From: Phaeosaccion multiseriatum
Taxonomy: Eukaryota; Protista; Ochrophyta, other classes
DNA: 64,000 bases
NCBI GenBank assembly: GCA_965112735.1
Contig: OZ218960.1
Coordinates: 2,418,001-2,482,000 of the forward strand
Direction of reading: 5' to 3'
Positions 10,200 through 58,369 of this stretch are shown piece after piece. The first letter of the stretch is position 1, and every line of letters begins with the position of its first letter. The translations under genes were made by a program, and so were the position numbers. The notes under the pieces were generated by a model. The model saw only the letters and a program-made list of their open reading frames with translations. It ran no database searches and was not told the DNA's origin.

Positions 10200-12020
10200 C
10201 TACTGCTTCCGCTGCTCTCTGCGCCCCCCCACATACCCTGTCTCCTCACCCACTAGGTTGTCCTCGGTCTCCACGCTAATGCCGAATGCCCACACCAACG
10301 CCGAGACAAATGCAGAGGGTGGCTTGCCCTCCTCAACGCTTAATGGGCCCTCTCCTTCGCCCCCCTCCTCGCCCCTCTGCACGACCGAGGACGAATCTTC
10401 CTGCCCTTCGCTCTTGCTCCCCCTACTCCCTCTGGAACGATCACGAACACGATGAGAACGGGGCCGGGTTTTGGACTTCTTCGCCCTGCTGGTGCCACCG
10501 CTTTCCCTGCCCCCTTCCTTCTCCCATTGGTCCAGCGAGACGACTCTACTACTTCCCGCCCTGCTGGGCAGCGCGGAGTCCGCGGCGCAGCAAAGGCCAG
10601 CGGACATGGGGGGGAGGTCGCGAGGGTGGCCCTGAGGTGCCGGCATGGGCCTGCTTACTCCATGGAAAGCTTCGTTGGGCGCGGCCGAGTCGGCGTAGCA
10701 GCAATCTGTCCCACCGGGAAGAAGAGACTTGGCGCCGTGGCGGGACCCGTTCTGCGGCCTTCTCGTAGTAGACGTCGCTGGTCTGCTGTTGGGCATTGCA
10801 GAGTCCACGGCGCAGCAGAACTCAATCCCGAACGCCCCTCCTAATCCTGCCATGCTTTCGCTGGGCTCCGAATTCCCGAAGGTGTAGCGGCTCTCTCTGC
10901 GCGGCCGCGCTGGCCTCCTCTCCCCTCTGCTCGATACGAGCACCCTATCCAATAATGACAACGGAGAGGCTTCGCCTTTGTCTTTCCCCGTTCCCCTCCC
11001 TGTTCTTCCAAAAAGCTCAGTAGCTACGGGAGAAAGTTTGGTTTGAAAGGGGCCGATGCGTACGCCAAAGCCAAGAAGCAGCAGCCAGGCCAGCTGTAGC
11101 AATAGAGGAAGTAGAGTACAGTCTCAACAGCGACAGCCCTGTTGAAAGCGGGGAATCCCTTCCCTTTGGTGTCTTTGTGCCTCTGGGGCGAATGGCGATG
11201 GTTGGGAAAGAGGTTGATTTGAAATTTGAAATTCAGTCTTCCCCCTTCCAAAACCTTCCACTTCCCCTGGGTGTGCGCTCTTGTGCCCCTCGGAGCGGCG
11301 GTGTGAGGTGTGAGGGAGGAGGGAGGGGTGGAGGGAGTGAGTGAGGGAGGGAGTAAGCGAGTGCATGGGCGGGTGAGTGCATTACAGAGCGAACACGAGT
11401 GAGTGAGTGAGTGAATGCGTTAGCGGCTAGCAAGAATGCGTGCGTGAGTGAGTGCGTGCGTAAGTGAGTGAGGTACGTACTCACGAGTCCCCAATCTACC
11501 GAGGCAGCTGCTAGACGAAGCTAGTGCCCTGAAGCAGCATGCCTCCCCAGATCTCTCTCCTCGATAGCACCCACTGGCTGTAGCCAAACTAGTTACGGGG
11601 CGGGAGGATTCTTCGCGACGCGCCGTGTGGCTGGTAAGCTCATCAACGAGCTTGTATACCTTCTAGACCATGTGTCCATGGCTGAAGGAGTGATTGAGTG
11701 AGTGAGTGAGGAAGTTAGGGAAGTGGGTGGGTGAGTGAGGGAGGGAGTGGGTGAGTACGTGAGTGCGTGGGTGGGTGCGTGGGTGAGTCGGTGAGGACGT
11801 GAGTGAGTGAGTGAGCGAGTACGTGTAGCTAGGTGGGTGAATCGGTGAGGACGTGAGAGAGGAGTGAGAGAGGAGTGGCTGAGTAAGTGGCTGAGTGAGG
11901 GGAGGGAGGGGGTCCGATAGCAGATAGCATGCCGGCCGGTGATAGCAGATAGCGGATAGCACGTCAGGGGTGAAACATTTCTTCCTTTGAGCTTCTACGT
12001 TTTCTGGGCACGCCGAGGCT
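10200..12020 (-). pseudogene. Possible degenerate spliced gene remnant, unidentified
   Basis: Exon-like non-repetitive blocks (about 10200-11290, 11484-11680, 11974-12018) alternate with intron-like (GTGA)n tracts. I could not build a stop-free model, and the top end is disrupted by MITE fragments. Confidence 0.25.
11914..11973. mobile_element. MITE family C, right-end fragment
   Basis: GATAGC-rich segment ending TCAGGGGTGA; reverse-complement-similar to 12167-12237. Confidence 0.55.
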
Positions 12021-12166
12021 GAATGAATGAGTGAGTGAGTGAGTGAGTGAGTGAGTGAGGAAGTTAGGGAAGTGAGTGAGGGAGTGGGTGAGTACGTGAG
12101 TGCGTGGGTGGTGGGCATGTGATTGAGTGGGTGAGGACGTGAGTGAGGAGCTTCGAAGGAGCTGAG

Positions 12167-12286
12167 TCAACCCCTCCTGATGCGCTATCCGCTACCCGCT
12201 ATCGCCGGCGCCAGCCGGCGCGCTATCTGCTATCGGGCCCCGGGGGGGCCGATAGTCAACGATAGTGTGCTATCGAGAATGTGGGC
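12167..12286. mobile_element. MITE family C, left-end fragment
   Basis: Starts TCAACCCCTCCTGA, carries GCTATC repeats and shares GCTATCGAGAATGTGGGC with the 12361-12452 copy. Confidence 0.55.
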
Positions 12287-12360
12287 ATTTTCCCTTTAAG
12301 TGCCATCTATGGTTGTCTAAAAGTAACGCCTCACCGCCCCGGGGAACTTAAGCCCCCGAG

Positions 12361-12452
12361 TCAACCCCTGATACACTCACTATCGATCCGCTATTCGCCG
12401 GCGGCTGATAGCGCGCTATCGAGAATGTGGGCGATAGTGTATCAGGGGTTGA
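12361..12452. mobile_element. MITE family C, complete 92-bp copy
   Basis: 17-bp TIRs TCAACCCCTGATACACT...AGTGTATCAGGGGTTGA. Flanks CCCGAG / CCCGTG suggest a 6-bp TSD with one mismatch. Confidence 0.7.
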
Positions 12453-12826
12453 CCCGTGTTGTGTGTCAAGTCCCACATCGAGCAGAGAGGGCACACCTGT
12501 GGAGCACCAGCTGGCTGTGTGAAGCCGGTGCACGGCATTTGCTGCAACGAGCTGTTTGGGTTAGAGTCGATTAGAGGGGCTTTTTAGATGCTATGAGCAC
12601 CGTCAGTACCGATCGTGAGCACATGCAAGCCTACAGGGGGTGGGTGGTGGGTGGGTAAAGTGGGGCAGTGGGGCGATTGGAGGGTCGGCTCCAGACTGGC
12701 CTAGAAGCCTATGCTCTAGGCCCTAGGCCGAGCGGCCTAAGCCCGCTCTAGGCCTAGGCCGGCGGCCGTCGGCCGCTCTAGGCCGGCCATTTTTTCTCCC
12801 TAGGCCGGCGGTTCTAGGCCTAGGCC

Positions 12827-12976
12827 TCGACCTATCTGATCAGTAATTACGGCCGGCGCAGCCGGCCTGATTACTGATTCTGACCGGCGCCAGCCGGCCT
12901 GAGTACTGATTATGCGCCAGCCGGGGGCTGATTACTGATTACGGCCGGCGCACACCGTAATCTTGTCCAGGGTCGA
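12827..12976 (+). mobile_element. MITE family B copy 1 (left TIR partly deleted)
   Basis: Begins TCGACC and ends ATCTTGTCCAGGGTCGA; its CTGATTA/GCCGGC-repeat body is near-identical to 14553-14682. Confidence 0.8.
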
Positions 12977-14240
12977 AGAGAGGGAGGGAGGGAGGGAGGG
13001 AGGGGGAGGGAGGGAGGGGGAGGGAGGGAGGGAGGGAGGGAGGGAGGGAGGGAGGGAGGGAGGGAGGGAGGGAGGGAGGGAGGGAGGGAGGGAGGGAGGG
13101 AGGGAGGGAGGGAGGGAGGGAGGGAGGGAGGGAGGGAGGGAGGGAGGGAGGGAGGGAGGGAGGGAGGGAGGGAGGGAGGGAGGGAGGGAGGGAGGGAGGG
13201 AGGGAGGGAGGGAGGGAGGGAGGGAGGGAGGGAGGGAGGGAGGGAGGGAGGGAGGGAGGGAGGGAGGGAGGGAGGGAGGGAGGGAGGGAGGGAGGGAGGG
13301 AGGGAGGGAGGGAGGGAGGGAGGGAGGGAGGGAGGGAGGGAGGGAGGGAGGGAGGGAGGGAGGGAGGGAGGGAGGGAGGGAGGGAGGGAGGGAGGGAGGG
13401 AGGGAGGGAGGGAGGGAGGGAGGGAGGGAGGGAGGGAGGGAGGGAGGGAGGGAGGGAGGGAGGGAGGGAGGGAGGGAGGGAGGGAGGGAGGGAGGGAGGG
13501 AGGGAGGGAGGGAGGGAGGGAGGGAGGGAGGGAGGGAGGGAGGGAGGGAGGGAGGGAGGGAGGGAGGGAGGGAGGGAGGGAGGGAGGGAGGGAGGGAGGG
13601 AGGGAGGGAGGGAGGGAGGGAGGGAGGGAGGGAGGGAGGGAGGGAGGGAGGGAGGGAGGGAGGGAGGGAGGGAGGGAGGGAGGGAGGGAGGGAGGGAGGG
13701 AGGGAGGGAGGGAGGGAGGGAGGGAGGGAGGGAGGGAGGGAGGGAGGGAGGGAGGGAGGGAGGGAGGGAGGGAGGTAGGGAGGGAGGTAGGTAGGTAGGT
13801 AGGGAGGGAGGGAGGGAGGGAGGGAGGGAGGGAGGGAGGGAGGGAGGGAGGGAGGGAGGGAGGGAGGGAGGGAGGAGGAGGGAGGGAGGGAGGGAGGGAG
13901 GGAGGGAGGGAGGGAGGGAGGGAGGGAGGGAGGGAGGGAGGGAGGGAGGGAGGGAGGGAGGGAGGGAGGGAGGGAGGGAGGGAGGGAGGGAGGGAGGGAG
14001 GGAGGGAGGGAGGGAGGGAGGGAGGGAGGGAAGGAGGGAGGGAGGGAGGGAGGGAGGGAGAGAGGGAGGGAGGGAGGGAAGAAGGGAGGGAGGGAGGGAG
14101 GGAGGGAGGGAGGGAGGGAGGGAGGGAGGGAGGGAGGGAGGGAGGGAGGGAGGGAGGGAGGGAGGGAGGGAGGGAGGGAGGGAGGGAGGGAGGGAGGGAG
14201 GGAGGGAGGGTTAGGGTTAGGGTTAGGGTTAGGGTTAGGG

Positions 14241-14281
<41 letters not shown>

Positions 14282-14552
14282 GGTTAGGGTTAGGGTTAGG
14301 GTTAGGGTTAGGTTAGGGTTATGAGGGAGGGAAGGAGGGAGGGAGGGAAGGAGGGAGGGAAGGAGGGAGGGAGGGAGGGAGGGAGGGAGGGAGGGAGGGA
14401 GGGAGGGAGGGAGGGAGGGAGGGAGGGAGGGAGGGAGGGAGGGAGGGAGGGAGGGAGGGAGGGAGGGAGGGAGGGAGGGAGGGAGGGAGGGAGGGAGGGA
14501 GGGAGGGAGAGAGGGAGGAGGGAGGGAGGGAGGGAGGGAGGGAGGGAGGGAG
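12977..14552 (+). repeat. (GGGA)n tract, about 1.6 kb, between the two family-B MITEs
   Basis: Near-pure GGGA tetramer array. Confidence 0.95.
14211..14321 (+). repeat. Interstitial telomere-type repeat (TTAGGG), about 18 units
   Basis: Tandem TTAGGG with one TTTAGGG and one TTAGG unit, embedded in the GGGA tract. Confidence 0.92.
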
Positions 14553-14682
14553 TCGACCCTGGACAAGATCATCTGATTCTGATTACAGCCGGTGACCAGC
14601 CGGCCTGATTACTGATTTTGCGCCGGCCGGGGGCTGATTACTGGTTACGGCCGGCGCACACCGTAATCTTGTCCAGGGTCGA
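14553..14682 (+). mobile_element. MITE family B copy 2, complete 130 bp
   Basis: Perfect 17-bp TIRs TCGACCCTGGACAAGAT...ATCTTGTCCAGGGTCGA. Confidence 0.88.
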
Positions 14683-15141
14683 TAGGCCTAGGCCGGGGGG
14701 GCTGCGCCAAAAATAGGCCTAGGCCGGGGACCTGCGGCCCCCTCTAGGCCTAGGCCGGGGGCCTGCGGCCCCCCTAGGCCGGCCGAATTTCGTCTCTAGG
14801 CCTAGGCTTCTAGGCCAGTCTGGAGCCGATGGAGGGGGCGGGTTTGGTGGTCAAAATGAGCTCATATCGCTTAAGTAGGGTCCGATTACGAGAGGGCACA
14901 CGCTGGTGGGTGCCAGTAGGGCGTAAAACAGTCGAAAACAGCGGAAAAAGCACTCTCGAGGGCCTCTTTTGAGCGAAAAAACAATCGCAAATATTAATTG
15001 AATTACGTTCACGCCTTAATGCAAAAGTTACGGTATAGGGAAAAGTGGAACGAAAAAAATGAGTTTAAGTTTGAGCGGTTCCTCCCAAGCGGGAGGGAAA
15101 TCCGGAAGAGGGGGGGGCGTACAACAAAGAGTGCGATAGAT

Positions 15142-27712
<12,571 letters not shown>

Positions 27713-32693: not shown

Positions 32694-41337
<8,644 letters not shown>

Positions 41338-41666: not shown

Positions 41667-58369
<16,703 letters not shown>

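What the first reader, a model, noticed from the sequence alone, without database searches (positions are those of the whole stretch)
11914..14836. Three MITE families sharing a TCRRCYCYNGA terminus and 6-7 bp TSDs: a possibly unclassified DNA-transposon group
Seen: three different short TIR elements within 3 kb start TCGGCTCCAGA (A), TCGACCCTGGA (B) and TCAACCCCTGA (C), giving the consensus TCRRCYCYNGA. Each has its own reiterated subterminal word (A CTAGGCC, B CTGATTA, C GATAGC) separated by GCCGGC palindromes. TSDs are 7 bp perfect (A), 6 bp (B composite) and 6 bp with one mismatch (C). Knowledge: common superfamilies have other signatures (hAT YA.. with mostly 8 bp, P CA.. with 7-8 bp, IS3EU TA.. 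with 6 bp, Dada 6-7 bp without TIRs). Inference: these are non-autonomous derivatives of related transposases with a conserved cut site and diverged binding motifs. I cannot assign them to a known superfamily.
Basis: partly seen in the sequence, partly recalled or inferred. Interest (0 to 1): 0.78.

Follow-up and report, generated by a model that had tools for sequence, protein, structure and literature searches.

The report
Nest of related miniature DNA transposons
A 3-kb stretch upstream of a gene holds several small non-coding jumping-gene relics that share the same 11-base ends and body plan. They are real and related, but this window alone cannot show that they form a new transposon group.

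Summary
Three short inverted-repeat element types (A, B, C) lie at 11909-14836, and all begin with TC..C.C..GA. The nine ends in the window align to the consensus TCGACCCCnGA. Each type is built from about 30-bp units: a doubled private 6-7-mer followed by a short GC-rich palindrome. B and the long form of C also share an exact 15-bp spacer.

- Only A has a clean target-site duplication (7/7, TGGAGGG).
- C has 5/6 matches, which chance gives about 3% of the time.
- The B "6-bp TSD" is part of a 12-bp repeat of A's own motif, so its length cannot be read.
- The three C pieces sit at the same position in three tandem 340-bp units, so they probably record one insertion that was later triplicated.

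No other copy exists in the remaining 61 kb or in any collection I could scan.

This scan has already reported the same TCG-ended elements on other DNA of this genome. Other agents also report an 8.4-kb P-like transposon with TCG ends and a 7-bp duplication. That is the likely mobiliser, but I did not test it.

Verdict: real, related MITEs, probably of a divergent P-related lineage.

The parts
12678..12684 (.). Left copy of the 7-bp target-site duplication TGGAGGG of element A
   Evidence: chance 3e-4
12685..12826 (+). Element A, left arm. It holds the 27-nt terminal inverted repeat (12685-12711, starts TCGGCTCCAGA) and a direct array of about 30-bp units made of single or doubled CTAGGCC plus GC-rich palindromes.
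   Evidence: (period 30)
12821..12826 (.). TAGGCC left of the B composite. It is part of a 12-nt TAGGCCTAGGCC flank repeat and is A's own motif, so the TSD length is ambiguous.
12827..12976 (+). Element B1 (150 bp). The 5' end is reduced to TCGACC (about 12 nt of the inverted repeat deleted) and the 3' end is intact. It carries four direct units of doubled CTGATTA plus GCCGGC palindromes.
12977..14552 (.). (GGGA)n microsatellite of about 1.6 kb between B1 and B2, with an embedded (TTAGGG)19 block at 14207-14321
14553..14682 (+). Element B2 (130 bp). It is complete, with 17-nt perfect terminal inverted repeats starting TCGACCCTGGA and three direct units. It is 95% identical to B1 over 87 nt.
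14683..14829 (+). Element A, right arm. It holds a direct array of 31-bp units and the 27-nt terminal inverted repeat at 14803-14829.
14830..14836 (.). Right copy of the 7-bp target-site duplication TGGAGGG of element A
12361..12452 (+). Element C (92 bp). It is complete, with 17-18-nt perfect terminal inverted repeats starting TCAACCCCTGA. It is flanked by CCCGAG (12355-12360) and CCCGTG (12453-12458).
12167..12286 (+). Element Y, the long form of C. It has the 5' end TCAACCCCTCCTGA, GCTATC arrays and a palindromic centre, but lacks the last 20 nt or so, including the 3' inverted repeat. It shares the 15-mer CCGGCGCCAGCCGGC with B1.
11909..11975 (+). Element X, the 3' half of a long C-type element ending CAGGGGTGA. 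Its 5' half is missing and a (GAGT)n-like tract lies in its place.
11649..12452 (+). Three tandem units of about 340 bp (starting near 11649, 11990 and 12300). Each carries a C-type element at the same relative place.
   Evidence: (95 nt at 84%)

Best explanation
The stretch is a nest of non-autonomous cut-and-paste DNA transposons (MITEs) from one lineage.

Shown here:
- The three families share the outermost 11 bp (consensus TCGACCCCnGA).
- They share one body plan: a short terminal inverted repeat, then units of about 30 bp. Each unit is a doubled family-specific 6-7-mer followed by a short GC-rich palindrome.
- Element A inserted with a 7-bp staggered target cut.
- A B-type unit lies at the centre of A.
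- A C-type element was later copied with its flank by local tandem duplication.

Inferred, not shown:
- A DDE transposase supplied in trans uses the shared outer 11 bp as its cleavage and active-site contact.
- A sequence-specific DNA-binding domain of each family's own transposase variant reads the private inner repeat and doubled words.
- Integration uses a 6-7-bp stagger.

The most likely enzyme source is the 8.4-kb transposon with TCG termini, a 7-bp TSD and a P-element-like transposase that other agents report elsewhere in this genome. That would place these MITEs in a divergent branch of, or beside, the P superfamily. I did not test this link.
For: Inverted repeats, motif arrays and coordinates come. 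A has a perfect 7-bp TSD and is the only such pair in 64 kb, with a null of 3e-4. The nine ends align to TCGACCCCnGA with invariant T1, C5, C7, G10 and A11. Random triples reach that similarity 4e-4 of the time, while the next 13 nt show only chance-level identity of 4-5 of 13. B1 and Y share an exact 15-mer spacer. As single strands, C and B2 fold far better than shuffles (z = -6.3 and -8.3), and B1 also does (z = -5.3), as expected for inverted-repeat elements. Leads only (AI notes, untested here): s1-354563 and s1-352635 report the P-like element with TCG ends, a 7-bp TSD and hundreds of miniature copies. s1-360361 reports TCGACCCCTGA termini with a 6-bp TSD. s1-345961 reports TCGRC ends with swapped doubled motifs. 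Published P-superfamily elements make 7-bp (Galileo, 1360), 8-bp (P) or 8-9-bp (BuT5) TSDs and do have MITEs (PMC4168063, PMC3698922).
Against: I could examine no copy outside this 3 kb. There were none in the other 61 kb and none in the metagenome, viral or prokaryote collections. Multi-copy status, boundaries and TSD length therefore rest on one clean case in this window. A 6-bp TSD lies below the published 7-9-bp range for the P superfamily. From my own knowledge, P-family ends usually begin CA, not TCG. The arrays in A and B are direct, so they could be internal minisatellites in a genome that expands repeats everywhere, and not binding sites. The transposase link is second-hand.
Confidence: 0.6

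Rival explanations
1. The elements belong to a Dada-related lineage that bears inverted repeats and does not target RNA genes. A Dada-type DDE transposase moves them and makes the 6-7-bp duplications typical of that superfamily.
For: The published TSD range of Dada is exactly 6-7 bp (PMC3706591, PMC8869645). A Dada family is annotated in the brown alga Ectocarpus (PMC12477816). One first-stage note called the local transposase 'Dada/P-like'.
Against: Described Dada elements have no terminal inverted repeats and insert into tRNA, snRNA or 5S genes. The elements here have 17-27-nt inverted repeats. No tRNA lies in the window and no small-RNA family matches 11500-12990. Follow-up agents report the local transposase as P-like.
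Confidence: 0.15
2. Only A is a true transposon insertion. The B and C structures are local palindromic minisatellite products of replication slippage and tandem duplication in a hyper-repetitive genome, and the shared terminus is partly coincidence.
For: B gives no usable TSD and C gives only 5/6 (null 0.034). The C pieces are tandem duplicates. The window has more than 240 tandem-repeat rows. No second locus of any family could be found.
Against: B1 and B2 both end exactly at TCGA, with perfect 17-nt inverted ends and discrete boundaries against unrelated flanks. The three termini are more alike than chance allows (4e-4). B and Y share a 15-mer. Other agents report the same termini elsewhere in the genome.
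Confidence: 0.1
3. The elements are MITEs of another established superfamily (hAT, Mutator, IS3EU or Polinton-type integrase) with an atypical TSD.
For: Subterminal repeated words are common in hAT, Mutator and CACTA elements. From my own knowledge, IS3EU and Polinton make 6-bp TSDs.
Against: A's TSD is exactly 7 bp. That is not the 8 bp of hAT, the 9-11 bp of Mutator or the 3 bp of CACTA, and the termini are not YARNG, CACTA or AG (from my own knowledge). No such transposase was seen in the window, and 10 ORFs had no Pfam hit.
Confidence: 0.1
4. A, B and C are three unrelated MITE families whose similar ends are convergent or coincidental.
For: Only 6 of the 11 terminal columns are invariant, and the inner parts of the inverted repeats are unrelated.
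Against: The chance level is 4e-4 to 8e-4. The families share an architecture of about 30-bp units, and B and C share a 15-mer.
Confidence: 0.05

Closest known systems
P superfamily and its MITE BuT5 (Drosophila repleta group); Galileo and 1360
   Same: These are cut-and-paste elements with inverted repeats. Galileo and 1360 make 7-bp TSDs, as A does. TSD length varies within a family (BuT5, 8 or 9 bp). Galileo ends are internally repetitive. A non-coding MITE shares only its ends with the autonomous element (PMC3698922, PMC4168063).
   Different: The TSD here may go down to 6 bp. The termini are TCG..., not CA... (my own knowledge). The arrays are doubled 6-7-mers with GC palindromes. No transposase homology was tested here.
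Dada superfamily
   Same: The TSD range is 6-7 bp. The transposase belongs to the same broad hAT/P/MuDR/Kolobok-related group (PMC3706591).
   Different: Dada has no terminal inverted repeats and inserts into small RNA genes. These elements have clear inverted repeats and lie in ordinary non-coding DNA, with no tRNA in the window.
hAT-type MITEs with subterminal repeats (Ac/Ds-like)
   Same: Both have short inverted repeats plus reiterated short words near the ends that serve as transposase binding sites (my own knowledge).
   Different: hAT makes 8-bp TSDs and has YARNG termini. Here the TSD is 7 bp (perhaps 6) and the termini are TCG.

Membership tests
MITE (non-autonomous inverted-repeat DNA transposon) | Short, non-coding, with terminal inverted repeats | tested here: met
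   A is 289 bp without its insert, B is 130-150 bp and C is 92 bp. Inverted repeats are 17-27 nt and perfect. The only long ORF in the region (12932-14572, minus strand) runs almost entirely through the microsatellite, so there is no real coding sequence.
MITE (non-autonomous inverted-repeat DNA transposon) | Flanked by a target-site duplication of fixed length | tested here: inconclusive
   A has 7/7 (null 3e-4). C has 5/6 (null 0.034). B is uninformative because the flank is A's own repeat.
MITE (non-autonomous inverted-repeat DNA transposon) | Many dispersed copies in the genome | not testable with these tools
Other agents' notes claim high copy number.
P superfamily | TSD of 7-8 bp (up to 9) | tested here: inconclusive
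   A has 7 bp, which fits. C suggests 6 bp, which is outside the range. B is unreadable (range from PMC3698922).
P superfamily | Autonomous partner encodes a P/THAP9-type DDE transposase and shares the MITE's ends | not testable with these tools
   There is no transposase in the window. This rests only on other agents' notes.
Dada superfamily | TSD of 6-7 bp | tested here: met
   A has 7 bp and C probably has 6 bp.
Dada superfamily | No terminal inverted repeats; insertion into tRNA, snRNA or 5S genes | tested here: not met
   Perfect 17-27-nt inverted repeats are present. There are no tRNA genes and no small-RNA family matches at 11500-12990.
hAT superfamily | 8-bp TSD | tested here: not met
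   The direct repeat flanking A is exactly 7 nt and cannot be extended.

The most novel reading that the evidence does not exclude
The TCG-ended elements, with 6-7-bp TSDs, form a previously undescribed deep lineage of DNA transposons related to P and Dada. In this lineage the outer 11 bp are fixed for catalysis. The inner recognition word is swapped from family to family on a conserved scaffold of about 30-bp units with GC-palindrome spacers. That would be a natural example of modular retargeting of transposase-end recognition.
Probability: 0.3. Interest if true: 0.7.

Novelty: new variant of a known kind. Interest (0 to 1): 0.42.

Why it matters
If confirmed genome-wide, several MITE families would keep one 11-bp cleavage end while exchanging their doubled recognition words on a common scaffold. 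That would give a clear view of how transposase-end specificity diversifies within one lineage. It would also extend the TSD and terminus range known for P/Dada-related transposons into stramenopile-type algae, where most DNA transposon families are still listed as unknown (PMC12477816). On the evidence of this window alone, it is an ordinary though well-preserved MITE nest near a gene.

Tried and rejected
1. Other copies in the window. Exact and 3-mismatch searches with the inverted repeats, and a word-7 blastn of all seven pieces, found nothing outside 11909-14829.
2. Public collections. The B 22-mer and A 24-mer gave 0 hits in metagenome contigs. The B 22-mer and a two-ended TCGACCCCTGA pattern gave 0 hits in prokaryote genomes. 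In viral contigs the B 17-mer gave 10 hits, about what I estimate for a 17-mer in a collection that size. The A 24-mer and two two-ended patterns gave 0 hits there.
4. Organism identity. An ankyrin ORF had no close relative (best 31% identity), and the exact-protein look-up was empty. The Atlas neighbours were mixed eukaryote clusters, with Chlorophyta the commonest phylum in several. The organism is not identified here. One other agent calls it an alga related to brown seaweeds.
5. Transposase in the window. None was found. Long ORFs are microsatellite read-throughs and 10 complex ORFs had no Pfam hit.
6. RNA families. C has only a sub-threshold MIR6201 match (26 bits against a gathering score of 69), which I reject as hairpin likeness.
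7. Homology between A's two outer flanks. Not above shuffles, and a shared 12-mer is not a repeated motif.
8. Literature. I found no paper describing TCG-ended elements with 6-7-bp TSDs or a P-like transposase with an NHL propeller.
9. Findings index. The look-up by sequence was blank.
Full report
**Context.** The window is eukaryotic, about 58% G+C and extremely rich in microsatellites, with more than 240 tandem-repeat rows. Long ORFs are mostly repeat read-throughs. There are no tRNA genes. I could not identify the organism. An ankyrin ORF has no close relative in the protein collection, and the exact-protein look-up was empty. The flagged 3 kb lies between an upstream tract of GT-rich repeats and an ORF that runs from about 14998 to 15297.

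**Checking the observation.** All the claimed features are present.
- Element A spans 12685-14829. Its terminal inverted repeats are 27/27 identical and start TCGGCTCCAGA.
- A is flanked by TGGAGGG on both sides. Among all inverted-repeat pairs in the 64 kb, it is the only one with a perfect flanking repeat of 5 nt or more. The chance of a 7/7 flank match at that spacing in this sequence is 3e-4.
- Element B occurs twice inside A. B2 (14553-14682, 130 bp) has perfect 17-nt ends starting TCGACCCTGGA.
- B1 (12827-12976, 150 bp) has the same 3' end, but its 5' inverted repeat has lost about 12 nt and keeps only the terminal TCGACC. The two copies are 95% identical over 87 nt.
- Element C (12361-12452, 92 bp) has 17-18-nt perfect ends starting TCAACCCCTGA.
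- The private words are confined to their elements. All 15 plus-strand CTAGGCC lie in A and all 7 CTGATTA lie in B1 or B2. GATAGC/GCTATC cluster at 11914-12420, and 17 of the window's 27 GCCGGC sites are in this stretch.

**Are the ends related?** The three 11-mers agree at 7-8 of 11 positions pairwise. Random triples of 11-mers from this window, microsatellites included, do as well 4e-4 of the time. The next 13 nt show only chance-level identity. An alignment of all nine ends in the window gives the consensus TCGACCCCnGA, with T1, C5, C7, G10 and A11 invariant.

The families also share a body plan. Tandem Repeats Finder reports periods of 29-31 bp in A and B. Each unit is a doubled 6-7-mer followed by a short GC-rich palindrome with a small loop, for example GGCCGGC-GCA-GCCGGCC in B and GGGGGCC-TGC-GGCCCCC in A. 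B1 and the long C-type element Y share the exact 15-mer CCGGCGCCAGCCGGC in that spacer position. So the relatedness goes beyond the terminus. The words in A and B are all in one orientation. They therefore form direct internal arrays, not mirror-image subterminal sites. Only the long C form is symmetric.

1. The B composite. The repeat flanking B1..B2 is 12 nt, TAGGCCTAGGCC, which is A's own doubled motif. Between 2 and 7% of positions inside A already have equal 6-mers on both sides. A 6-bp TSD is compatible with this but is not demonstrated. Neither B1 nor B2 has a TSD of its own. Their inner ends abut a 1.6-kb (GGGA)n tract that contains (TTAGGG)19.
2. The C duplication. CCCGAG/CCCGTG is a 5/6 match, with a chance level of 0.034.
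3. The C pieces. These are X (11909-11975, a 3' half), Y (12167-12286, lacking the last 20 nt or so) and C. They lie at the same relative place in three tandem units of about 340 bp that start near 11649, 11990 and 12300. The units share a 95-nt block at 84% identity and similar sequence on both sides of the element. The 20 nt left of Y and left of C also look homologous. The simplest reading is one ancestral insertion followed by local triplication and decay, not three transpositions.

The window therefore records about three independent insertion events, and only one of them gives a clean TSD.

**Search for other copies.** None of the seven pieces has a relative in the other 61 kb. Exact scans for the A and B ends and for two-ended TCGACCCCTGA patterns found nothing in metagenome, prokaryote-genome or viral collections.

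**What the scan already holds.** These are AI notes, used as leads and not as evidence. The scan found this kind of element before, on other DNA of the same genome:
- a nest of MITEs with TCGACCCCTGA termini and 6-bp TSDs (s1-360361);
- TCGRC-ended MITEs, each type with its own doubled 6-7-mer (s1-345961);
- similar first-stage notes (s1-360317, s1-352671, s1-331576).

The consensus I derived independently is the same string as the terminus named in s1-360361. Follow-up agents also describe an 8.4-kb transposon with TCG termini and a 7-bp TSD. They report a P-element-like transposase carrying an NHL propeller and a PHD finger, with hundreds of miniature copies (s1-354563, s1-352635). This changed my reading of the likely superfamily from unknown to probably P-related. 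I could not reach those sequences to compare ends.

**Comparison with known groups.**
- **P superfamily.** Published elements make TSDs of 7 bp (Galileo, 1360), 8 bp (P) or 8-9 bp (repleta-group P and its MITE BuT5). Galileo has internally repetitive ends (PMC4168063, PMC3698922). A fits this range, but a true 6-bp TSD would lie below it.
- **Dada.** It makes exactly 6-7-bp TSDs but lacks terminal inverted repeats and targets small RNA genes (PMC3706591). Neither feature holds here.
- **hAT.** Its 8-bp TSD does not match A.
- **Literature.** I found no paper describing TCG-ended elements with 6-7-bp TSDs. In Ectocarpus, 51 DNA transposon families are still listed as unknown.

**Mechanism.** Shown: the inverted repeats, one 7-bp staggered insertion, nesting of B in A, and local duplication of the C-bearing unit. 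Inferred: mobilisation in trans by a DDE transposase. In this model the shared outer 11 bp are the catalytic contact, and the private inner repeat and doubled words are the binding sites of family-specific transposase variants. The direct arrays could instead be minisatellite growth in a repeat-prone genome.

**Verdict.** These are real, related MITEs. The claim of a new group is neither established nor refuted by this window. The best available lead points to a divergent P-related lineage, so I rate it a new variant of a known kind, of moderate interest.

Noticed in passing
window 12977-14552: A 1.6-kb (GGGA)n array with an embedded (TTAGGG)19 block (14207-14321) lies exactly between the 3' end of B1 and the 5' end of B2. 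This may be a repaired break or a telomerase-healing trace between two abutting elements. Another finding (s1-331483) covers it.
   Followed up: partly
window 11649-12452: A tandem triplication of a unit of about 340 bp. Each unit starts with a similar short sequence followed by a (GAGT)n-like tract. The unit boundary coincides with the 3' end of the C-type element, which hints that the transposon end took part in the duplication.
   Followed up: partly
window 20092, 23820-23883, 33669, 35875-36046, 39244, 48482, 56762-56933: The 19-mer GCAGTTGGTGATACAGCAG has 17 matches within 2 mismatches, against 0 expected. Some form 15-bp tandem arrays. Its nature is unknown.
   Followed up: partly
window 18224, 19416-19470, 27852, 30505, 36498, 39680-40045, 40863, 48676, 51975: The 17-mer GGATGGCAGTGGATGGG has 17 matches within 2 mismatches, against 0.03 expected. 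Some form 10-bp arrays. Its nature is unknown.
   Followed up: partly
window 12354-12459: Element C gives a sub-threshold Rfam match to the plant microRNA precursor family MIR6201 (26 bits against a gathering score of 69). This is most likely plain hairpin likeness.
   Followed up: no
window 12827-12842: B1 keeps the terminal 6 nt TCGACC but has lost the next 12 nt or so of its inverted repeat. This end has been damaged internally while its very tip survives.
   Followed up: no
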